Of a DNA stretch of 42,485 nucleotides, positions 1 to 42,318 are shown piece after piece (within the stretch, counting starts at the first letter, position 1; each line of letters starts with the position of its first letter). This DNA comes from Octopus bimaculoides (Eukaryota), in NCBI RefSeq assembly GCF_001194135.2, contig NC_068990.1, positions 49,986,499 to 50,028,983 on the forward strand. Reading direction: 5' to 3'. A program made the translations under genes and the position numbers. The notes beneath the pieces are model-generated. The model worked only from the letters and a program-made list of their open reading frames with translations. It ran no database searches and was not told where the DNA came from.

Positions 1-269
1 ATTTAACTGAGGCAGCATTCATCCAAACTTTCAAGATCCAACCTCAGATTTATCATCGCATTGTCTCTCTACTACCTCTGTCAAATGAATCACCAAAATT
101 GGCCTTTCATTATTTATAATCTGTACCTGTTTGTTTGCTTACGAAATAAGATACACAAAAACGTGTTTCTGAATTACGTGTATTTACTTTATATACATAT
201 GAGTTGAAAACTTTCTTCTAGCATTCCACTTAATATCTATGTTCCATGCTGGCATGGATTGGAGAGTTA

Positions 270-383
270 TTAATGTAGAAATATGGTATCGTAGCTACTA
301 ACAGTTGAGGGTTGCGTAGTCTAGACGGCGTTTTAGATTTCATTATTCTCTTTAACCCGGGCAACGCCGGGTGTTTCTGCTAG
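270..383 (+). mobile_element. Helitron 3' terminus
   Basis: GC hairpin CCCGG-gcaacg-CCGGG (356-371), then CTAG (380-383) followed by T: the canonical Helitron 3' end. The left boundary is approximate. Confidence 0.65.
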
Positions 384-418
384 TTGATATATAAAGTTTC
401 CCCAAACTTAAACATATA

Positions 419-1226
419 TCTAATATAATAAATGTGAATGTCAGTTTGTCACACTTTTTCAACTTTAATAAACCTTTTCTACTGGAAGCACAAGGCTTCA
501 AATTTTGGGGGAAGGGATTATGTTGATTACATCGACCCCAGTATGTAACTGGTACTAATTTTATCAATTCCGAAAGGATGAAAGGCAAAGTCGACCTCAG
601 AAGAATTCAAACTTACAACCTAACAGCAGACGAAATACCACTAAGTATTTCGCCCAGTGTGCTAACGAGTCTTCCAGCTTGCCGCCTTAATGTAATATAA
701 TATAATATAATACATGTGAATATATCAGTGTGTCACACTTTTTCAACTTTACTCCTAGAAGTCCAACATATCATACCATTTTGGAATCAGGCTGACTCTG
801 TGAGTAAATTAAAAACATTCCAGGCTGAATCTGGACCGATAATTCTGAAATTTTGGATTCCCAAGTTTTCATTACTGTGATTGTTTCCAGCAATTTTTTT
901 ATGTGACTTTTTGTGACAAATTTGTTTTGTACGATAACAATTTTTTTTACTCTAAAGGCCAACTCTGTGAGTAAATTAAGAACATTCTGGGCTGAATCCG
1001 GACCCACAATCCTGAAATTTGGGATTCCCAAGTTTTCATTACTGGAATTGTTTTTGGCAATTTTTTTTTACATAATTTTTGCGACGAATATGATCATCAT
1101 TGGGATATGACTCTAGAGGAAGCAATTGCAACAAATTCTTCAAAACAAGTCAGAGATCTGTCTGCAGATCTTCCTATTTGGGGTCGGTTGCTCAAAAGCT
1201 GCCCAATAGGGCAGCTTTTAAGCTAG
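419..1226 (+). mobile_element. Non-autonomous Helitron with internal tandem repeats and a nested SINE
   Basis: 5' end A|TCTAATATAATAAATG at 418/419. Internal ~167-bp-period repeats (ctctgtgagtaaatta...ttcccaagttttcattactg at ~797 and ~963). 3' hairpin AAAAGCTGCCC-aata-GGGCAGCTTTT (1194-1219), then CTAG|T (1223-1227). Confidence 0.7.
475..690 (-). mobile_element. tRNA-derived SINE, family A
   Basis: The reverse complement begins aaggcggcaagctgg...ttagca and carries the shared body (gtcgactttgcctttcatcc...actggggtcgatgtaatc) seen in the copies at 6150-6813. Confidence 0.75.
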
Positions 1227-1275
<49 letters not shown>

Positions 1276-1276
<1 letters not shown>

Positions 1277-1445
1277 GGTGCAAGTATGATTTCAAGGGTG
1301 CAGGCATGCCTGTGTGGTGAAGAATCTGCTTTGCAGCCATCTGGTTTTGAGTTCAGTCTCACTGCATGGCACCCTGTCTTGTCTTGTAGCCTTGTGCTGA
1401 GTATTGCCTTATAAGGGAATTTAGATGAAAACTGTGTAGAAGCCC
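1276..1445 (+). mobile_element. tRNA-derived SINE, family B (5' part, diverged)
   Basis: Aligns by eye to the full copies at 17704-18100 and 36842-37215 (tgtggtaag...gttcagtc...ggcacc...gtagaagccc). Confidence 0.55.
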
Positions 1446-1479
1446 ATCATGTGTGTGTGTGTACGTATGTATGTGTGTG

Positions 1480-2677
1480 TATGTATGTTCAAGAGCAATA
1501 AACACTGAAAATGTGCAGAGAACAACTTCTGCCACATTCCAGGGAGAAAAACTAGAAGTAGTTGATAGCTTCCGTTACCTAGGTGACCAAGTCAGTAGTG
1601 GGGGTGGGTGTTCTGAAAGTGTAGCTGCTAGAATAAGAATAGTCTAGGCGAAGTTCAGAGAGCTCCTACTTCTGCTGGTGACAAAGGGCCTCTTGCTCAG
1701 AGTAAAAGGTCGACTGTATGATGCATGTGTATGAACAGCCATGCTACATGGCAGTGAAACTGCTGAGGACATGCGTAAGCTTGCAAGGAACGAAGCCAGT
1801 ATGCTCCGCTGGATGTGTAATGTCAGTGTGCATACTCAACAGAGTATACGTGCCTTGAGAGAAAAGTTGGACCTAAGAAGCATCAGATGTGGTGTGCAAG
1901 AGAGACGACTGCGCTGGTAAGGTCATGTGGTGCAAATGGATGAGGATAGCTGTGTGAAAAAGTGTCACACTCTAGCGGTTGATGGAAACTGTGGAAGAGG
2001 TAGACCCAGGAAGACCTGGGATGAGGTGGTGAAGGACGACCTTCAAACATTAGGCCTCATCGAAGCAATGACTAGTGACCAAGACCTTTGGAAATATGCT
2101 GTGCTAGAGAAGACCCGGCAAGCCAAGTGAGACCTAACCCGTGGCCTATGCCAGTGGTGTAACCAGCCCACTTAGGCATACCTTTCTTTCACTGGACACA
2201 AAACTCTGCTTGCGAAGACCTGTTGAGGCAAGTGAAATCGAAATCAAATTCGATGACAGCACCGCATGACTGGCATTCGTGCTAGTGGAGTGCTAAGAGC
2301 ACGTAAAAAGCACCATTCAAGTGTGATCGTTACCAGTGTCGCCTTACTGGCACTTGTGCCGGTGGTACATGGAAAACAACATTCAAGCGAGGGCACTGCC
2401 AGTGTTGCTGGACTGGTTCCTATGCAGGTGATACATAAAAACACCATTTGAGCATGGCCATTGCCAGTACCGCCTGACTGGCCCTTGTGCCGGTGGTACG
2501 TAAAAGTACCCACTACACTCTTGGAGTGATTGGTATTAGGAAAAGCATCCAGCTGTAGAAACTCTGTCAGATCGGATTGGAGCCTGGTGCAGCCATCTAG
2601 CTCACCAGTCCCCAGTCAAACTGTCCAACCCATGCCAGCATAGAAATCGGACGTTAAATGATGATGATGATGATGAT
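1480..2677 (+). mobile_element. RTE-clade LINE, 5'-truncated (RT C-terminus, 3' UTR and (ATG)n tail)
   Basis: Interrupted frames EVVDSFRYLGDQVSSGGGC...RLYDACV...MLHGSET...RRLRW.GHVVQM...RGRPRKTWDEVVKDDL are typical RTE motifs. Ends ...ggacgttaaatgatgatgatg. Confidence 0.9.
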
Positions 2678-2691
2678 ATACTTATTCTTTG

Positions 2692-2746
<55 letters not shown>

Positions 2747-3924
2747 TCCTAGATAGCTCTATTTCCCTCTCTTTTGCTTTCTCTCCTTCTCTATCTTTCT
2801 AGCGTTGCCTTTGATGAACTTTAAACCTTTAACAGTAAGCTTAGTCTTTTTTTTTTCTCTGCCATATTGATTCTATTTCTAACATAGCAATGTATTATTA
2901 TATGCATAAACATAAACGACTAAGGCTAGTTCTTGCTGGCTTGGCATGACTTTCTTATGAAGAAAATATGCTGTTTTCTTTTTCTTCTCTAATTCACTAC
3001 CTAGACACCTATAACTTCCAGCTTGCTCCTGTTCTTCCTGTAACCATCCCACCCCCCAACCACTACCAGATAAACCAAACAGCTCATGTGAATAGTCATT
3101 TGCCACAAGGTTTTGTCATTAGGCAACAGCCCAAATCAAAATCAAAATAAAATAAAATAACAACCCTTAGTAATAAGCAGCATTAACTACCACACTGCTC
3201 TTTGGTTTAAGTTTCTCAGCTTCTACAACTAAAACTACTGTTAAAGTCCAATGTTTTTTCTCTCTGTACCTCTGTCTCATGGACCCCACATTTTTTCTTC
3301 CTCCTCCCCCACCCCTTTTTTCTTCACAGGTGCCAGGTGTTGGGCTGCTGGCAACTAAACCAGCAACCCCATAAAGCTTGCTTTGTGAGGAAGGTGCTTT
3401 TCTTGCTATTTGGTCACCCTGCAGGATTAAATACAAGACCTGTAAAAGCGGATGAACTCTGAAGAGTCAATAGCCATCCAAATTAGCAACTCTCATTACT
3501 AGCTATGCTGCTTATTAAGCCCTTACCCACTTAAGACAGCAGCAATAATAACAACTCTGCTGCCTTGTGGCAATACTCACTTAAGGGAAAGACTTCGGGA
3601 GTAAACTCCAAGGATAAATCAAGAGCCAGAGTCCCTAAGTCAGTTCAATACTGTAGATAACCTTGTTCTAGCAACTCCTGTGACCCCACTGGTGCCAAGT
3701 TGTATTGGCTCCTGCCCTTCCCTTGGATAACACTGGTGGCGGTGGAGAGAGGAGATGTGTTGTATGGGCAATTGCCAATCTCCCATGACTTAACTAGTAT
3801 TTTCCTGCTATCATCATCACGAGATCCTTTAGTATTGTTCTTGTTGTTAGCAGTAGTGGTCGTAGCAGTAGAAAAAGTACCTCTAAGTGTCATTATTATT
3901 GTTTATTTAGCATTGGTTGGAACT

Positions 3925-5385
3925 TATTAATAAAGTTCTTTTCTCAGATTGTTCTCTTGATTTCACTTGGACTGTGTACTTTGTAGAATGGAAATATGAT
4001 GAATATTTTCCGACCGCATGTTGCTAGATGGTTATTCAAAGGTATCTGACAGACATCTGAGTCTCTAATTTGCTGTTGGTGCACACATGAACGTTTTGAC
4101 AGTGCATTTGCAGTCTGACCCACATATAGTTCTTCACAATTCTGGCATTTGATGCAGTAAATCAAATTTCTGCTTTTGCAGTTCATATTTGTGTTTGTGA
4201 ATATTTTTCTGGTTTTTGTGTTCACATATTAGCCAGCATGTATGAATTGGCATGTGCTACATTAGCTATCATTGCATTTAGATACAGTGAATGATTGGTC
4301 TTTGTTGCTAAGGTCAAACTTTGCCTTTGTTAATAATTTTTTAAAGTTTTTAGGCTGTTTTTTTACTAAGAACCATAGCTCAATCTGTGATTATATCTTT
4401 TAATTCATTACTTTGAGCAGTGATTGGTAGGTTTGCTTTGGCAATGTTGAAGATATTCTGGCAATATGGGCTGCATGTCACTATAAATGGTATGACTTGT
4501 TCCTGTTTTCCTCTTCTTTGGGTTGTCCTCAGTTGTATGGGTATTTTTATAGCCCACTGTATGCCATTTTCTATAAGTAGAGACAAGTATTTTTGTTTGA
4601 GCAAAAATTCTCTTAGTTCNNNNNNNNNNNNNNTATGGGCTGCATGTCACTATAAATGGTATGACTTGTTCCTGTTTTCCTCTTCTTTGGGTTGTCCTCA
4701 GTTGTATGGGTATTTTTATAGCCCACTGTATGCCATTTTCTATAAGTAGAGACAAGTATTTTTGTTTGAGCAAAAATTCTCTTAGTTCTGTTAGGCATTT
4801 GTTCCTAATATTCACTTCTTCTACAATGGTACAAATTCTTCTGGCCAGGCAGTATGGGATGTTGTGTTTTGTATGTTGCGGACGGCATGACTTAAAATTC
4901 AGGTATTAATGTGTGTCCATGTATTTATAGTATATACCTGTGGTAATGGTGGTGTTCTTTTTAATTACCATTATATCTAGGAATGGTAATTTGGTACTAC
5001 TCGTCTCCTTTGTAAATTGTAGAGATGGATGTAGGTTGTTCAGGAGGATATTGAACTCTTCTAGAGTATTTAGAGATTCTGTCCAGATTATGAAGCAAGC
5101 ATCAAGATATTTCTTCTATGAATTTTCAATATACTTTTGAAATTCAATGCTATAGTTTGTGTAAACAGGAGCAAACCTCATTCCCATCACCATGCCTTTA
5201 ATTTGGATGTAATTCTTTCCATTGAAGAAGAATGCGTTGTTTCCCAGAATAAGTCTGACTGTGTCTAATATAAAATGGCACTGTAAATCTGTTGGAAATC
5301 ACTTCTCTATGTTTTTCTACCCAGTATTTAATCGCCTTTATTCCTAAATCATGTGGAATATTGGTGTAAAGGCTTACCACATCAA
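3925..5385 (-). mobile_element. Penelope-like retroelement relic (RT and GIY-YIG endonuclease)
   Basis: RT motif VSLYTNIPHDLG (5198-5380) and C-terminal GIY-YIG domain NLIYCIKCQNCEELYVGQT...KR..VH (3944-4225). Frameshifted and spans an assembly gap. Confidence 0.88.
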
Positions 5386-5419
5386 AACTAAGTAGAAGTA
5401 TATGAAATTTTGAATTTAG

Positions 5420-5488
5420 TTCATGAACCCCCAGTACTACCTTTGCAGACCACCAAGGAGTCTGCAGACCACAGGTTGGGAACCACTG
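5420..5488. mobile_element. hAT-type MITE end
   Basis: The terminus caggttgggaaccactg is the reverse complement of CAGTGGTTCCCAACC, a Charlie/hAT-like TIR. Confidence 0.45.
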
Positions 5489-5537
5489 CTCTAGACCATT
5501 TCCAATAACAAATGATGATTTTTATTCAAATATAGCT

Positions 5538-5680
5538 GCAGGAGTGACTGTGGTTAAGGTTTGCTTCCCAACCACATGGTTTCAGGTTAATGTGGCTCCT
5601 TGGGAAAGTGTCTTCTGCTATAGCCCCAGGCTGACCAAAGCCTTGGAGAAGCTTTGGTAGACAGAAACTGAAAGAAGCTT
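5538..5680 (+). mobile_element. SINE family B, 5' part
   Basis: gcaggagtgactgtggttaagg...cccaaccacatgg...gactgaaagaagc matches the other copies in the window. Confidence 0.7.
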
Positions 5681-6129
5681 CTCTCTCACTCTCTCTCTAC
5701 ATGCGTGCATGCACATGTGTGTGTGTATGAGTAAGTATATGTTTGTGTCTATTTGTCTTGGCAGTAATTGGTTGTTGTAAATGGATGACATTCACTTCCC
5801 ATATTCTGAAAAAATATGTCTGACCATGGGGAAATATATCTTGCTTGGAAATTAATAAGAGTTGGCTACAGAATACCATCTGTTCATAGAAAATCTGCCT
5901 CAAACTCTGTCCAAGCTATGCAAACATGGAAAAGTGGATGTTAAAATGATGATGACACAAAGTCAATTTCTGGAAAGGAAGGGAGTACATCTGAATGAAT
6001 AATTCACACTACATTACTAGTATTAAGATGACAGAGAGGTAGAAATAGTAAAGCAATGAAGCAATTACTTTACAGTATTTGTTTCTATCCCCCTCTTCTA
6101 TCCCCAAGGTACTGTCACATTTGCTTTTT

Positions 6130-6833
6130 ATTATTTTAAGAGCAAACAAATGCGGTGAGCTGGCAGAATCATTAGCATGCCAGACGAAATGCTTAGCGGT
6201 ATTTCGCCTGTCACTACCTTCTGAGTTCAAATTCCACTGAGGTTGACTTTGCCTTTCATCCTTTTAGGGTCGATTAAATAAGTACCATTTATGCACTGGG
6301 TTCAATGTAATTGACTTAATCCCTTCCCCCAAATTTGAAGCTTTGTGCTTCATTTGAAAGGATTATTTTAAGAGCAAACAAGGCGGCAAGCTGGCAGAAT
6401 CATTAGCATGCCAGGCAAAATGCTTAGTGGCATGACATTCTATCTGTGTCTCTGTTCTGAGTTCAAATTCTGCCAAAGTTAAATTTGGGGTCAATAAAAT
6501 AAGTACTAGTTGAGCACTGGGGGTCGAAGAAATCTGTCCCCTAATATTGCTGGCCTTGTGCCAAAATCTGAAACCATTGTTTTAAGAGCAAACAAGGTAG
6601 CATACTGGCAGAATTGTCACTGCAGTAGACAGAATTTTTAATGACATTTCTCTCAGCACTTTATGTTCTGAGTTCAAAAGCTGTCAAGATCATCTTTAAC
6701 TTACATCCTTTTGTGAGATGATAAAATGGAAGTACTAATCAAGTACTAGGGTTGATGTAATCAACTTGCCTCTCCTCTCAAAAATTGCTGGCCTTGTGCC
6801 AAAAATAGAAAAAATTATTTGAAGAGAAATAAC
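6130..6833 (+). mobile_element. Head-to-tail trimer of SINE family A with repeated spacer
   Basis: Three diverged units (~6150-6361, 6382-6575, 6596-6813). Each is preceded by ATTATTTTAAGAGCAAACAA or a close variant (6130, 6362, 6576; a degenerate copy at 6814). Confidence 0.8.
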
Positions 6834-7852
6834 ATAAGTATCTGCCATATACTGGGATCAACTATATTGTTTACCTAAAAATATTTGGACATGTACCAAG
6901 GTAATAAAAAACAAAACAGATATATTGCAGGAATTTTTATCATCCTCGGCACATTTTGAACTCAGCACAATAAGAAGCTGGTTGCAGTAACAGAACATTG
7001 ATTTCTTTTGAAAAGACACACCCAAAGTTAGATATTATTATTTTTAACCACAAATCTTAGGTTCAGGATATAGTCAATTGCACTGACACTTGTACTGAAC
7101 CAATACATTTTATTAACCCTGTAAAGAGGGAAGGTACAGTCAACCCAGTAAAGAGAGGACTTGAACAAAGAACACAGAGTGAAGTAACTAAACACTGCAT
7201 ATCCTACTGTTCCACTGATTCTGTTAGACCAATGACCTGTTAAATGTAATATGTTAATTTTGTGCAATGGCACAAGACTCCACAGTTCAATTTTAAAGAC
7301 CTTGTGCTTGTACCTCGTTTTACTGACATCAATGGCACTTGAAGTCAGAATATAAGTGACCTTAATTAAATAGTGCAAGGTATTTTGTCTGATGCATTAA
7401 CAATCTTATTGATCTTCCACTCTTACATGAAATATATTGTAATGTATTACTAAGACTTATTTTTATTACTCGTAACACCAATGTAGTTGTTGTTATTATT
7501 GCTGTTGGTTAGCCCCAGGTCAGTTCTTATTGAAAAGCTTTATAACCAAAGGAGTGCCACTTGTGATAAACATTTTTATAGGACTATTTAGAACTACATA
7601 ATCTAATTTTATATTATAATAGTGTGTAATTTGAGATAAATTTAGCTGCTACTTCTAGCAGGTTTATGACCATCTAATGGATCTCTCAAAGGCACAGGTT
7701 TTTATTAATAAGCTCCAAGTTGACTTTGATCAAATAGACCTATCATATAGGGATATTGTGACTACCACTTTTTCTTTTTTTTTCCTCACACTAGCATAAT
7801 CTATCCAGAACCAAATTATTCAGTATCCTTCCATTTATTAAAGATGATAGGT

Positions 7853-8012
7853 GCAGATGTGGTTGTATGGTAAGAGGCTTGCTTCCCAACTGCATAATTT
7901 CAGATTCAGTCCCACTGAGTAGCACTTTGGGCAAGTGTCTTCTACTGTAGCTTTGGTCTAACCAAAGCATTGTGAGTGTATTTGAGAGATGGAAACTGAA
8001 AGAAGTCTGTCA
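7853..8012 (+). mobile_element. SINE family B, 5' part
   Basis: Same head and body as 36842-37215. Confidence 0.7.
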
Positions 8013-9491
8013 TATATATATATAAGCATATATGTATATGTGTTTATAAGTGTTAATGTCTCCTTGTCTTGACGTTGCGTGATAGTTGTAAACAATTGTG
8101 GCCTTCATATCCATTATTCTGCGGCGGTGACGACAGCGACGACGATCACAGAGTATAATTTAAGAATTATTTGTTTGCTATTTCCTTACATTGATGTATC
8201 TAGCTGTGTAGGGTAGTGGTGCACTGCAATTTTTGAAAAATTATATAATTTAAAGTTTCGAAATTCTATACTTAATAGAGTGTCTTGAAAAAGACGTATT
8301 TCTTCACAATTTTGTTATACACAAGTACAATTAATAAAACAAGGTATATAGCGTAAACTAGAAAAAGTGTTCGACAGGCTCAGCTAAACATGCAAATACA
8401 ATTATTATCAAACATTCTAATTTTGTGTTTACTGCAAATTAGACGGTTAAACGCTGGATCCATTTTATTAAGAATCCATTTAAAACAAAATCTTGATTAC
8501 ACCCAACAGATAGACAAATTTTTTTTTTAATTTTAAACTCTAAAATACAGTTGCTTTTCTTTTTAACTTTCTATGTTAAGTGCGTCAGTAATGTCTTTGT
8601 TTGATCCTGAATGCGCCACAGAGTAAAGAATACTGACAACCACTGATGTAATTACATAGCTGCCAGGTTAAAAACGTCGCGTTGCCATCATAGCATCCTG
8701 GGGTAGATCCTCACAGCACAGTAATTTGGTTAAATAGCTTCTATAGTCTCAGGTTCTCATCCAAACGCTGTAAGTCAAATTAAGCTACCGGAAACTATGA
8801 AAACCTGTCGACTGTATTGTAACCTATATTTCAAACGAGCTAGCCTTGACGGGCACTTCATGCTAATTGGAAAACTTTATTATTGAAGTGCGGCACCAAC
8901 TGGAAATAACCTGCACTTGGTAAGCCTTGAATTCATGACTACATATTTACTTCCATCAATCAGCATCTAGTAAATGTCGTTTGACGGCCGAAGAAGTTTT
9001 AGTTTTATTCATATATTTCTAAATGTCTTTTTCTTTTGCTGGGTGTGTGTGTGTGTGAGATGGCAGGTGGTATTTTGATTCGCATTAAAAATGTTAGGGA
9101 CGATCCTTGGTATTTTTTTTTTTCATTTTAGAATTTTATAGGCTTAACAAAACGAAAACGAACAACTAAAACAAGTTCTAAACGATCTGATACAATAATC
9201 ACCCTCCTTTTCACTCATTCAAAATATTAAATATTAAAATTGGAAATTGTTATTGAAAGAAAATACAAAATATTTCAAATAGAGAATGAGGTAAGCAAGC
9301 ATGTGTGTAGTAGTAATTCAATACACATCTTATGTTGTACATAAGATAAGTGGAATAAATAGATAAGACTTTGTGATTACTACATTCTGAAATTTATGTA
9401 AACTAGTTATTTATTCTGATTGTTATCATAATAGTATTCTAAGGCAGAAGCAAAATATCCGAAAGAATTATTATATATAAAACAATATTAC

Positions 9492-9602
9492 CTTTCTCGA
9501 AATTATTTCTGATTGTCTGATTTTGTCTTCATCTGGTATTAAAGATAGAGTGTGTCTGCATTTCTTTCTCATCACAGCTTTTGCTGTTTGTATCGTGGCC
9601 AT
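9492..9602 (-). CDS. MTHFS: 5-formyltetrahydrofolate cyclo-ligase (MTHFS), coding exon 1; remaining exons lie left of the window
   Basis: Translates MATIQTAKAVMRKKCRHTLSLIPDEDKIRQSEIISRK (37 codons), resembling the MTHFS N-terminal helix (human ...AKRSLRGELKQRLRAMSAEERLRQSRVLSQK). Start context is acaatcATGG. The exon ends at a phase-0 donor AAG|gtaata at 9492/9491, at the same residue where the vertebrate first intron falls. I found no exon-2 motifs in 1-9490. Confidence 0.85.
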
Positions 9603-9691
9603 GATTGTAAGGGAAGTAACTGCTGCCACGCAAACTGAGTAACTGCCCTTGTTTTTGAGGCGAGTGAAAAACAATAAAAGAATATGTCTAC

Positions 9692-10113
9692 GTCGGCAAT
9701 AGTTTGTTGTTAAAAAGTTCGTTTGTAATGTTCTATACGTTCGATTGCAATGAAAAGTGAAGAATCTAAAGTTTTAAATCCTTACTTTTCGCCTGAGAAT
9801 GCGAAAGAGACGGATTTGGTTGTGACGTGATAAGTGAGATAATAATAGGAATTTGTTAAAGCTTATTGCATTTCTGTATTTAAAGTGTCATTAGTTGAAA
9901 AGTCTTTCAACTAATGACACTTTAAATACAGAAATGCAATAAGCTTTAACAAATTCCTATTATTATCTCACTTATCACGTCACAACCAAATCCGTCTCTT
10001 TCGCATTCTCAGGCGAAAAGTAAGGATTTAAAACTTTAGATTCTTCACTTTTCATTGCAATCGAACGTATAGAACATTACAAACGAACTTTTTAACAACA
10101 AACTATTGCCGAC
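9692..10113. repeat. Perfect 422-bp palindrome (arms 9692-9900 and 9905-10113, loop AGTC)
   Basis: Base-by-base comparison shows the right arm is the exact reverse complement of the left arm over 209 bp. Confidence 0.97.
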
Positions 10114-10143
10114 TATCTGATGACATACCTACCGCGGACAATA

Positions 10144-10455
10144 TTTTTTATTTTATTTATGCGCCCTTTTTTAAAGCCTAGTCAGGCTCATGGGCCTGGT
10201 TTCCCGGTTTCTACGGCGTGTGTCCCCCTCCCCCCAGCTGGACGGGACGCCTGTTCATCGCAGCGTTACTCAAGAAACAGGAAGAAAGAGTGAGAGAAAG
10301 TTGGGGCGAAAGAGTACAACGGGGTGTCGTCACCACCCATTGCCGAAGCCTTCTGGAGGTTTAGGTGTTTTCGTTCAATAAACACACGCAACGCCCAATC
10401 TGGGAATCGAAACCGCGAGTCCACTGCCCTAAACACTGAACCATTGCGTCTCCAC
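10144..10455 (-). mobile_element. tRNA-derived SINE, family C (intact-looking)
   Basis: Minus-strand head GTGGAGACGCAATGGTTCAGTGTTTAGG (A box), TTTCGATTCCC (B-box-like), central gcgatgaacaggcgtcccgtccag motif, and an A-rich tail (aaataaaataaaaa). Confidence 0.75.
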
Positions 10456-10548
10456 CCGCGGAAAATATACAGTGTCTTTAAGAAAAAGTGTATGAATCTC
10501 TTTAATGAAATACTGTCTATTTCTATGCCATTCCTGATTGCTCAGAAC

Positions 10549-10955
10549 TGTAGCGAACCCTACCAGTGAGAAAGGGAAATAAACGAGGGTTGCGTTTCCT
10601 ACTTCACTACAGGATATTCTGAATATGTTGTAACTTCCGGTGGGAATGCCAACAAGTGGCATTACAGCCAGTTGATATAAAAAGCGAAATACCGCGAAAT
10701 TCTCTCTCTTCCTCTTCTTACCTGGCTTTCTCTGGCACATTAGCACTTTGCCTGATCGCTCAACTTGTGCGGTCACACACACCTGATGTCTTGGACTTCC
10801 AACGACGAGTTTTATAATTAGCAGCCTTTAGATAAAATAACATGTTTGTATATATCTACCCTGTTATTCCATGCATTCACCTTTGTACCACTCAAATTGA
10901 TATAAATATAACGTGTATTTAAATCTATCTTAACGTCATTGCTTGCCCCACAACA
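10549..10955 (+). mobile_element. Putative solo LTR
   Basis: TG...CA termini (TGTAG...CAACA) flanked by CAGAAC/TAGAAC, a possible target duplication with one mismatch. Contains ACTTCCGGT (10633) and TATAAAA (10676) followed by a pyrimidine-rich tract. Confidence 0.45.
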
Positions 10956-10959
10956 TAGA

Positions 10960-40956: not shown

Positions 40957-41312
40957 CTATTTGGAAAATAATTTAATCAGTACAGAATAATCTTTATATT
41001 CAAAATTAGAATATAAAAAAAATCAATATATAAACCTGATTTTTTTCCCCCAACTTCCTTAAATCAAGCTTCAAACTACAGCAAATGCTACATTTGATCC
41101 CATATTCTTCTCCCACTTTTTTTTTAACAAAGTGATAGAATAAAGTAAAACATTTAAGAAATTCTAAATATAAATTTTGAAAGCACATTCCCAATTTTTA
41201 TATCACATTTTACATTTTTTAAAACTGAAATTGAAATGAAAACCTATATTATGTTAAAATTTGTAAGAGTTGAAAATACATAATAGTATAGATTTTAGTT
41301 GCATAAAAAACA

Positions 41313-42318
41313 TATTGAGTTGGCAAGAAAGTAATTTCGTTTTTTTAGTGTGAAATAAAAGTAATTTTTTTCTCATACAAAGAATCATATATTTTCCATT
41401 TTGTTCAATGACCTTTTGCCATCTTTCTGGCAATTTCATGGTTCTGCGCTTATAGAACTTCTGGTCCTTATCAGCCAAACACTGAAGTGCGATTTCAGCT
41501 CATCACCATTATTGAAAGAATTTTGCAAACTTTGAAATAAATGGTAATCTGATGGTGCAAGATTAAGGTTATATGGTAGATGTGACATCACTTCCCATCT
41601 AAGCTCCAATAATTTTTCACAAGTTAGCAAAGACGTGTGTGGTCCAGCATTGTCATGGTGGAACACGATTCCTTTACGATTTGCCAATTCTGGCCATTTN
41701 NNNNNNNNNTTTCACAAGTTAGCAAAGACGTGTGTGGTCCAGCATTGTCATGGTGGAACACGATTCCTTTACGATTTGCCAATTCTGGCCATTTTTCTTT
41801 GTTTCCTTCAGTAAACATCTAAATTGATTGTTTGATTCCTTGGAAGCAGCTCAAAATAAACAACACCTTTGTAATCCCACCAAATTGACAGCACAACCTT
41901 TTTTTGATGCAATTCAGCTTGGACTATGATCATTTTCAATTGATGTTATTGTAGACAATCTATTTTTCATCACCAGTGATGATTCCTTTAAAAAAAAAGG
42001 GCAATTTCATTGCATTTGAGATGCATATCGCAAATATTGATTCATTGGGTTAAGTGAATCTCTTCCAATTTATGTGGAACCCAAATATCAAGCTTCTTAA
42101 TAAGCTCAAGACATTTTAAGTGATTTTCAATTGTTTTGTGTGATACATTTAACCCCTCTGCAATCTCTTGCACAGTTATATGACAATCAGATTCAATTAT
42201 GGCTTTGATTTGGTCATCATCAACTTCAGTAGGTCAACCAGAACAGAACATTGGTCAACTTTGAGTGAAAAATCTCCAGAATGGAATTTTTAAAACCATT
42301 TCTCATATGTGCATTCTG
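41313..42318 (-). mobile_element. Mariner relic in an SMNDC1 intron
   Basis: WF.KFHSGDFSL, WVPHKL, FHHDNAGPH, HLPYNLNLAPSDYHLFQSLQN and LPERWQKVIEQNGKY motifs. A TIR-like end TATTGAGTTGGCAAGAAAG lies at 41313. Confidence 0.9.

What the first reader, a model, noticed from the sequence alone, without database searches (positions are those of the whole stretch)
9692..10113. Perfect 422-bp palindrome occupying the MTHFS proximal promoter
Seen: two 209-bp arms with zero mismatches and a 4-nt loop (AGTC), starting 90 bp upstream of the MTHFS ATG. The neighbouring repeats are all clearly decayed. Each arm carries promoter-like motifs (GTGACGTG, CRE/ATF-like; a nested mini-inversion TTTCGC-ctgagaat-GCGAAA), so these motifs face both directions. 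The ends read TA-c-GTCGGC... and ...GCCGAC-TA, which hints at a TA-target foldback element rather than an arbitrary break. Established: long perfect palindromes extrude cruciforms, are unstable and are hard to assemble, and coleoids have extensive ADAR editing of dsRNA. Inference: if real, this is a very young or actively homogenised foldback element that mirrors the MTHFS core promoter. It could drive divergent transcription or place a 209-bp dsRNA in a 5' UTR or intron. An assembly mirror artefact remains a serious alternative, because this contig shows other gap artefacts.
Basis: partly seen in the sequence, partly recalled or inferred. Interest (0 to 1): 0.75.

Follow-up and report, generated by a model that had tools for sequence, protein, structure and literature searches.

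The report
Perfect 422-bp palindrome upstream of MTHFS
A flawless 422-base hairpin-forming palindrome really is in this cephalopod scaffold, inside a promoter-like CpG island next to a probable MTHFS first exon, but without raw reads or a second assembly I cannot tell whether it is a very young inverted duplication, a small hairpin transposon or an assembly error.

Summary
The arms are 9692-9900 and 9905-10113, each 209 nt and 100% complementary, with the loop AGTC. The next longest non-microsatellite hairpin in the 42 kb is far shorter. The palindrome ends abruptly on both sides, and the window holds no other copy of the arm.

It lies 89 nt upstream of an ATG-started 37-codon exon with a GT donor, whose best solved-structure match is the N-terminus of human MTHFS (weak, E 0.6). 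It also lies in the middle of a 3-kb CpG-undepleted island (observed/expected CpG 0.94, against 0.38 in the rest of the window), so a promoter setting is plausible.

The scaffold does show gap-filling errors: two of its four N runs are flanked by perfect direct duplicates. However, the palindrome is 1.4 kb from the nearest gap and exits into a different unique flank, which a simple hairpin-contig error would not do.

- **Most likely (about 0.38):** a very young fold-back inverted duplication.
- **Assembly or library artefact:** about 0.35.
- **TA-target hairpin MITE:** about 0.2.

No public octopod sequence of this locus could be reached with these tools, so the real-or-artefact question stays open. 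The proposed functions (divergent transcription, dsRNA, editing) are untested. Interest is modest.

The parts
9692..9900 (.). Left arm of the palindrome (209 nt), next to the putative MTHFS exon 1
   Evidence: 32% G+C, 8 CpG against 4.6 expected. No tandem subrepeats.
9901..9904 (.). Central 4-nt spacer AGTC, which is not self-complementary
   Evidence: Because the centre is asymmetric, the k-mers across it cannot come from a palindromic (k-1)-mer strand switch in a de Bruijn graph. They must exist in sequenced molecules (inference; background in PMC9528984).
9905..10113 (.). Right arm, the exact reverse complement of the left arm
9492..9602 (-). Putative MTHFS exon 1 coding part: ATG at 9602-9600, 37 codons, then the donor AAG|GTAATA
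   Evidence: tblastn with human MTHFS, 34% over 38 aa, E 0.003. (top match in the Protein Data Bank is human MTHFS residues 4-40, E 0.61). No Pfam hit. No homologue in the protein collections.
9603..9691 (-). 89 nt between the ATG and the palindrome (5' UTR or proximal promoter)
   Evidence: No inverted similarity to the right flank beyond A-rich low complexity.
9689..9690 (.). Left TA, separated from the arm by one unpaired C (9691)
   Evidence: Chance of a TA/TA pair with up to 1 nt of slack is 0.024.
10114..10115 (.). Right TA, directly abutting the right arm
9787..9806 (.). Nested mini-hairpin TTTCGC-N8-GCGAAA, mirrored at 9999-10018
9822..9829 (.). GTGACGTG (half-CRE/ACGTG-like motif), mirrored at 9976-9983
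   Evidence: This is a motif match only, with no functional evidence.
8001..11000 (.). CpG-undepleted island that contains exon 1 and the palindrome
   Evidence: Observed/expected CpG is 0.94 with the right arm excluded, against 0.38 in the rest of the window. The 1-kb bins step from 0.07 (7001-8000) to 0.95 (8001-9000).
10145..10455 (-). 311-bp SINE-like retroposon in the right flank. It has an A-rich tail and sequences like tRNA A and B boxes. A 13-nt target duplication CCGCGGAMAATAT lies at 10132-10144 and 10456-10468 (12 of 13 identical).
   Evidence: read directly from the sequence. It is not called as a tRNA or by Rfam. It has no other copy in the window.

Best explanation
A real and very young local inverted duplication, a fold-back or 'snap-back' palindrome in the CpG-island promoter region of a probable MTHFS gene.

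**Proposed origin (inferred).**
1. A break or stalled 3' end arose just right of 9904.
2. That end folded back on itself at the short hairpin GAAA-AGTC-TTTC.
3. A polymerase copied 209 nt of the adjacent upstream DNA in inverted orientation.
4. The new end was joined by end-joining to the right-hand flank at 10113/10114.

**Age.** The event is recent. With 0 differences in 209 sites, arm divergence is below 1.4% at 95% confidence. It is also younger than the neighbouring SINE-like insertion, whose target duplication already carries a mismatch.

**Consequences (inferred, not shown).** The site would be cruciform-prone and fragile. The upstream motifs would be present in both orientations. A long hairpin RNA would form only if transcription starts distal to the palindrome.
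For: - **Structure:** the arms are perfect, the spacer is 4 nt, and identity drops from 100% to random at both outer ends.
- **Not obviously mobile:** the arm has no second copy in 42 kb and no tandem subrepeats.
- **Left arm looks native:** it is continuous with a CpG-undepleted island and shares its CpG richness.
- **Flanked by unique DNA:** the palindrome leaves into a different unique flank, which then runs into an older SINE-like insertion with its own target duplication. It is 1,443 bp from the nearest N run.
- **Needs read support at two points:** the asymmetric centre and the arm-to-right-flank junction must both be present in reads. This is expected for a real palindrome but needs two separate accidents for an artefact (inference).
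- **The mechanism is documented:** fold-back templated inverted insertions occur at breaks, with polymerase delta synthesis at one end and end joining at the other (PMC11724301).
Against: - Documented fold-back insertions are mostly 5-34 bp (PMC11724301), far shorter than 209.
- Perfect inverted repeats with short spacers this long are extremely rare in well-finished animal genomes. The longest in human has 140-bp arms (PMC13155455).
- From general knowledge, such palindromes are unstable in vivo.
- The scaffold demonstrably contains gap-filling errors.
- Any short-read assembler would build both arms from the same reads, so zero mismatches is partly forced.
- No independent sequence of the locus could be obtained.
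Confidence: 0.38

Rival explanations
1. An assembly or library artefact. The genome holds only one copy of the arm, or an inverted repeat with a different spacer or imperfect arms. The mirror copy was created during contig extension or gap closing, seeded by fold-back chimeric library molecules at the natural GAAA-AGTC-TTTC hairpin.
For: - This is a short-read scaffold with estimated-size N runs of 14, 209, 92 and 10.
- Two of the four gaps are flanked by perfect direct duplicates of 155 and 85 bp, which means unmerged extensions.
- Both arms of any palindrome longer than a read are built from the same reads, so perfect identity is what an artefact or a collapse would give.
- Library preparation is known to make chimeric reads at inverted repeats (PMC10908179).
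- A perfect 209-bp arm exceeds anything in the finished human genome.
Against: - The palindrome is not at a contig end or next to a gap; the nearest N run is 1,443 bp away.
- It does not run back along its own left flank. It exits at exactly the symmetric position into different unique DNA. That needs reads joining the inverted arm end to the right flank.
- The centre is not self-complementary, so it cannot arise from a graph strand switch alone.
- Where this pipeline failed to merge sequence it left Ns, and there are none here.
Confidence: 0.35
2. A hairpin-type miniature transposon: a non-autonomous Tc1/mariner-like element, analogous to human MADE1. It would be 423 bp and made almost entirely of two terminal inverted repeats, and would have inserted recently into a TA in the MTHFS promoter region.
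For: - TA lies on both sides if one unpaired C is counted as part of the element. A TA pair with that slack has a chance probability of 0.024.
- The outer boundaries are sharp.
- The element is short, non-coding and AT-rich.
- TA-targeting transposase remnants exist in the same window: a mariner-like pseudogene at about 41000-42300 and a DDE_3 fragment at 18266-18682.
Against: - There is no second copy of the arm or of its terminal 19-mer in 42 kb.
- The termini are not symmetric: C on the left has no matching G on the right.
- The strict TA-element-TA prediction without an offset fails.
- Perfect 209-bp inverted repeats would still require a very recent fold-back origin of the element itself.
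- The arm shares the CpG richness of the surrounding island.
Confidence: 0.2
3. An older palindrome whose arms are kept identical by arm-to-arm gene conversion, as in sex-chromosome palindromes.
For: The arms are 100% identical although all dispersed repeats nearby are 60-94% identical.
Against: - There is no decayed inverted similarity beyond the perfect core.
- The 4-nt spacer and 209-bp arms are unlike known conversion-maintained palindromes, which have kilobase arms and long spacers (general knowledge).
- A palindrome with so short a spacer would be expected to suffer centre deletions over time (general knowledge).
Confidence: 0.05

Closest known systems
[quoted passage not shown]
   Same: An exact inverted copy lies directly next to its template. 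The loop is very short and bounded by microhomology. The far end is joined to unrelated DNA without homology.
   Different: Described events are mostly 5-34 bp, and this one is 209 bp. Here the ancestral allele and the break are only inferred.
MADE1 / Hsmar1-derived hairpin MITEs (Tc1/mariner, TA target)
   Same: The element would consist almost wholly of two inverted repeats around a few central bases. There is a possible TA duplication, it is non-coding, and it lies near a gene.
   Different: MADE1 is 80 bp and present in thousands of copies. Here the element would be 423 bp, only one copy has been seen, the termini are asymmetric by 1 nt, and no related autonomous element was identified.
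Human palindromic AT-rich repeats (PATRRs; general knowledge)
   Same: They are several hundred bp, AT-rich, nearly perfect palindromes. They are cruciform-prone, hard to clone and hard to sequence.
   Different: PATRRs are about 90% AT and are not promoter-associated. This one is 68% AT, CpG-rich for its composition, and lies in a promoter-like island. Whether it is polymorphic or causes breakage is unknown.
Hairpin or palindromic misassemblies in short-read and long-read assemblies (PMC9528984, PMC10908179, PMC12870357)
   Same: The mirror identity is perfect, and the scaffold has other extension errors.
   Different: Typical hairpin contigs sit at contig ends and retrace their own flank. 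This palindrome is internal and is flanked by two different unique sequences.

Membership tests
Tc1/mariner-type hairpin MITE (MADE1-like) | TA target-site duplication directly abutting symmetric termini | tested here: inconclusive
   TA is present on both sides only if an unpaired C (9691) is allowed. The chance of this with such slack is 0.024 for TA and 0.24 for any dinucleotide.
Tc1/mariner-type hairpin MITE (MADE1-like) | Multiple dispersed copies in the genome | not testable with these tools
   There are none in the 42-kb window. No cephalopod genome could be reached: the arm 32-mer is absent from the metagenome and prokaryote collections.
Tc1/mariner-type hairpin MITE (MADE1-like) | Termini matching those of an autonomous element | tested here: inconclusive
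   The terminal 19-mer has no other match in the window at up to 3 mismatches, including near the mariner-like pseudogene. That pseudogene's own ends were not defined.
Classical Foldback (FB) transposons | Long inverted repeats built of tandem subrepeats | tested here: not met
   Tandem Repeats Finder reports nothing in 9692-10113.
Fold-back templated inverted insertion (break repair) | Exact inverted copy contiguous with its template, with a short loop | tested here: met
Fold-back templated inverted insertion (break repair) | Typical size of tens of bp | tested here: not met
   209 bp, against mostly 5-34 bp (PMC11724301).
Fold-back templated inverted insertion (break repair) | An ancestral or allelic sequence that lacks the inverted copy | not testable with these tools
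   No orthologous or allelic sequence could be retrieved.
Hairpin-contig assembly artefact | Located at a contig end or gap and retracing its own flank | tested here: not met
   The nearest N run is 1,443 bp away. The right flank is unrelated to the reverse complement of the left flank.
Hairpin-contig assembly artefact | No reads or single molecules spanning the centre and both flanks | not testable with these tools
   Raw reads are not available here.
miRNA or hairpin-RNA gene | Match to a curated RNA family at its gathering score, or evidence of expression | tested here: not met
   Only sub-threshold, structure-driven hits were found, for example MIR5998 at 76.6 bits against a gathering score of 180. 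There was nothing at gathering thresholds. Expression is not testable here.
MTHFS (5-formyltetrahydrofolate cyclo-ligase) gene, exon 1 | Significant similarity to the family | tested here: inconclusive
   The N-terminus aligns to the N-terminus of human MTHFS, at E 0.003 within the window but E 0.61 against the Protein Data Bank. There is no Pfam hit. An ATG, a GT donor and a CpG island support a first exon of some gene.

The most novel reading that the evidence does not exclude
The palindrome is real and transmitted through the germline. It would be a perfect palindrome with 209-bp arms, longer than any perfect short-spacer inverted repeat in the finished human genome. It would be tolerated in the middle of an unmethylated CpG-island promoter. 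There it would extrude a cruciform and act as a mirrored, bidirectional promoter module, or as the source of a long hairpin RNA (a substrate for ADAR or small-RNA pathways) that modulates MTHFS.
Probability: 0.05. Interest if true: 0.6.

Novelty: new member of a known kind. Interest (0 to 1): 0.3.

Why it matters
**If real:** this would be an unusually long perfect palindrome sitting in an active-looking promoter of a folate-metabolism gene. It would give a natural test case for how animal genomes tolerate cruciform-prone DNA. It would also be a snapshot of a fold-back duplication, or of the birth of a hairpin element, before any decay.

**If an artefact:** it is a useful flag for this assembly. 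The promoter of this gene, and probably other perfect palindromes in the same assembly, should not be used for motif or regulatory analysis without read-level checks.

Tried and rejected
**Attempts to find independent sequence of the locus. All failed.**
1. The exon-1 peptide found nothing in the 5.8-billion-protein collection.
2. A concatenation of eight local reading frames from 7028-11085 gave no hit. This shows that no gene calls from this region exist in the collection.
3. An HMMER scan of 1.84 billion representatives with exon 1 returned only three spurious tandem-repeat proteins.
4. A 32-mer from the arm is absent from the metagenome and prokaryote contig collections.
5. The window's LINE reverse transcriptase found no relative above 57% identity. 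The window's species and close relatives are therefore absent, and sampling their DNA for arm copies was not possible.

**Ideas rejected.**
- **A larger decayed inverted repeat around a perfect core.** Flank alignments are at null level.
- **A mechanistic link between the 209-N gap (11556-11764) and the 209-nt arm.** Both that gap and the 92-N gap lie in a related repeat of about 160-176 bp, so the equal length is probably coincidence.
- **miRNA family membership.** All hits are sub-threshold and structure-only.
- **Bacterial-type promoter or terminator scans.** They are uninformative for a eukaryote.

Full report
**1. The observation**

The sequence contains an inverted repeat with arms at 9692-9900 and 9905-10113. 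Each arm is 209 nt, the arms are 100% complementary, and they are separated by AGTC. As single-stranded DNA the 462-nt region folds at -255 kcal/mol, against -39.9 +/- 4.5 for dinucleotide shuffles (z = -48).

An exhaustive scan for perfect inverted repeats with a spacer of 10 or less finds nothing comparable. The next entries are (TA)n microsatellites with arms of 29 nt or less.

**2. The setting**

*The exon.* On the minus strand an ATG at 9602-9600 opens 37 codons that end at a good donor, AAG|GTAATA, so the coding exon is 9492-9602. The peptide aligns N-terminus to N-terminus with human MTHFS:
- 34% identity over 38 aa, E 0.003 within the window.
- Human MTHFS is also the top hit among 177,635 sequences of solved structures, but at E 0.61.
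- Pfam gives nothing.
- Neither protein collection contains a relative.

The MTHFS label is therefore plausible but weak. No further exons lie in 1-9491.

*The CpG island.* Independent support for 'first exon and promoter of some gene' comes from CpG content. The window as a whole is strongly CpG-depleted (observed/expected 0.38). The stretch 8001-11000 is not depleted (0.94 with the right arm excluded), and the edge at 8000 is sharp. In a methylated genome this is the signature of a region that is unmethylated in the germline, which typically means a promoter (inference). The palindrome lies in its centre, and the arm itself has 8 CpG against 4.6 expected.

*The right flank.* After 18 nt of unique sequence it enters a 311-bp SINE-like retroposon (10145-10455, minus strand, A-rich tail). 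This is bounded by a 13-nt target duplication with one mismatch.

*The rest of the window* is transposon-rich:
- LINE reverse transcriptase and endonuclease.
- Integrase remnants.
- A DDE_3 fragment.
- A mariner-like pseudogene.

The LINE reverse transcriptase has its best named relatives in Argonauta hians (55%) and Acanthosepion pharaonis (32%). This supports a cephalopod, probably octopod, origin.

**3. Is it an assembly artefact?**

*Evidence for an artefact.* The scaffold is a short-read-type assembly with N runs of 14, 209, 92 and 10. Two of those gaps are flanked by perfect direct duplicates: 4465-4619 = 4634-4788, and 41615-41699 = 41710-41794. These are contig extensions that overlapped but were never merged, so local extension errors do occur here. 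In addition, any palindrome with arms longer than a read is assembled from one pool of reads for both arms. 'Zero mismatches' is therefore partly forced and cannot be read as a precise age.

*Evidence against a simple hairpin-contig error.*
- The palindrome is 1,443 bp from the nearest N run.
- It does not retrace its own left flank. It leaves at the exactly symmetric position into unrelated unique DNA.
- Its centre, AGTC, is not self-complementary. It therefore cannot arise from the palindromic-overlap strand switch of bidirected de Bruijn graphs (PMC9528984).

Both the centre and the junction between the inverted arm and the right flank must therefore be present in sequenced molecules. That is what a real palindrome gives. 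An artefact needs two independent chimeric supports, for example library fold-back chimeras at inverted repeats (PMC10908179). Where this pipeline could not merge sequence it left Ns, and there are none here.

*The prior for a real structure is low.* In the finished human genome the longest perfect inverted repeat with a spacer of 8 or less has 140-bp arms (PMC13155455).

I put the artefact at about 0.35 and a real structure at about 0.6.

**4. If real, what is it?**

Identity falls from 100% to background at both outer ends. This rules out an old, decayed inverted repeat with a homogenised core.

*Transposon reading.*
- The arm has no other copy, and its terminal 19-mer has no other match, in 42 kb.
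- The arms have no tandem subrepeats, so it is not a classical Foldback element.
- A TA on each side fits a Tc1/mariner-type hairpin MITE only if one unpaired C is allowed. That configuration occurs by chance in 2.4% of placements for TA and 24% for any dinucleotide. The hint is real but modest.

*Fold-back reading.* Either way, perfect 209-bp arms imply a recent fold-back copying event. I therefore favour a local fold-back duplication, at about 0.38. In this model:
1. A 3' end near 9904 snapped back at GAAA-AGTC-TTTC.
2. It copied 209 nt of the adjacent upstream DNA.
3. It was end-joined to the right flank.

This is the mechanism shown for templated inverted insertions at breaks (PMC11724301), although those are mostly 5-34 bp.

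The hairpin-MITE reading gets about 0.2, and conversion-maintained antiquity about 0.05. With 0 differences in 209 sites, arm divergence is below 1.4% at 95% confidence.

**5. Function**

Nothing here tests function. The following are inferences:
- The mirrored motifs would face both ways.
- The site would be cruciform-prone.
- A 209-bp RNA hairpin would form only if transcription began distal to the palindrome, at least 512 nt upstream of the ATG.

Rfam hits over the hairpin are sub-threshold and structure-driven.

**6. What could not be done**

No independent sequence of this locus or species was reachable. The decisive tests remain open: read mapping, long reads or PCR across 9600-10200, genome-wide copy number of the arm, and orthologous promoters.

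**Verdict**

The origin is unresolved between a young fold-back duplication, an artefact and a hairpin MITE. The functional claims are untested. If real, the palindrome is a new member of a known kind, and interest is modest.

Noticed in passing
window 4465-4788 and 41615-41794: Two N runs (4620-4633 and 41700-41709) are each flanked by perfect direct duplicates, of 155 bp and 85 bp. These look like overlapping contig extensions that were never merged, so sequence around the gaps in this scaffold is duplicated artificially.
   Followed up: yes
window 11556-11764: This N run is exactly 209 bases, the same length as the palindrome arm. Its flanks and those of the 92-N gap (24362-24453) share a repeat of about 160-176 bp, so both gaps probably lie in an unassembled tandem-like repeat. 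The equal length is probably coincidence, but that is not proven.
   Followed up: partly
window 8001-11000: A CpG-undepleted island (observed/expected 0.94) in a window that is otherwise strongly CpG-depleted (0.38), with a sharp edge at about 8000. It is promoter-like and centred on the putative exon 1 and the palindrome.
   Followed up: yes
window 10132-10468: A 311-bp SINE-like retroposon on the minus strand, with an A-rich tail and sequences like tRNA A and B boxes. It is flanked by a 13-nt target duplication, CCGCGGAMAATAT, with 12 of 13 identical. It is not recognised by ARAGORN or Rfam and has no second copy in the window.
   Followed up: partly
window 29115-32126 (minus strand): A LINE with a 535-aa open reverse-transcriptase frame (RVT_1 plus zf-RVT) and a 218-aa endonuclease frame. 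The best named relatives are in Argonauta hians (55%) and Acanthosepion pharaonis (32%). Some hits come from metagenome records and one is labelled Herbaspirillum, which is probably host DNA misfiled.
   Followed up: partly
window ~41000-42300 (minus strand): A mariner-like transposase pseudogene with stop codons and a HHDNAGPH motif. It is interrupted by the 10-N gap and its duplicated flanks.
   Followed up: no
window 11030-13879: Remains of an LTR-type retroelement: a reverse-transcriptase-like frame at 11030-11335, DUF7041 at 12853-13116 and an integrase zinc-binding domain at 13499-13879. Direct repeats 12588-12804 and 14710-14927 are 85-90% identical.
   Followed up: no
window 20515-20713 and 21154-21352: A pair of 199-bp direct repeats, 99% identical and 639 bp apart. 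This is the only other near-perfect repeat in the window that is not next to a gap. Its nature is unknown.
   Followed up: no
window 9803-10002: Rfam covariance models of long-hairpin plant and animal miRNA precursors (MIR5998, mir-552 and others) score on both strands with small E-values but far below their gathering scores. Any perfect long hairpin triggers these models.
   Followed up: yes
window 18140-18682: A (CA)n/(CACACATA)n-rich stretch creates long spurious reading frames on both strands. It sits next to a Tc1/mariner-type DDE_3 transposase fragment.
   Followed up: no
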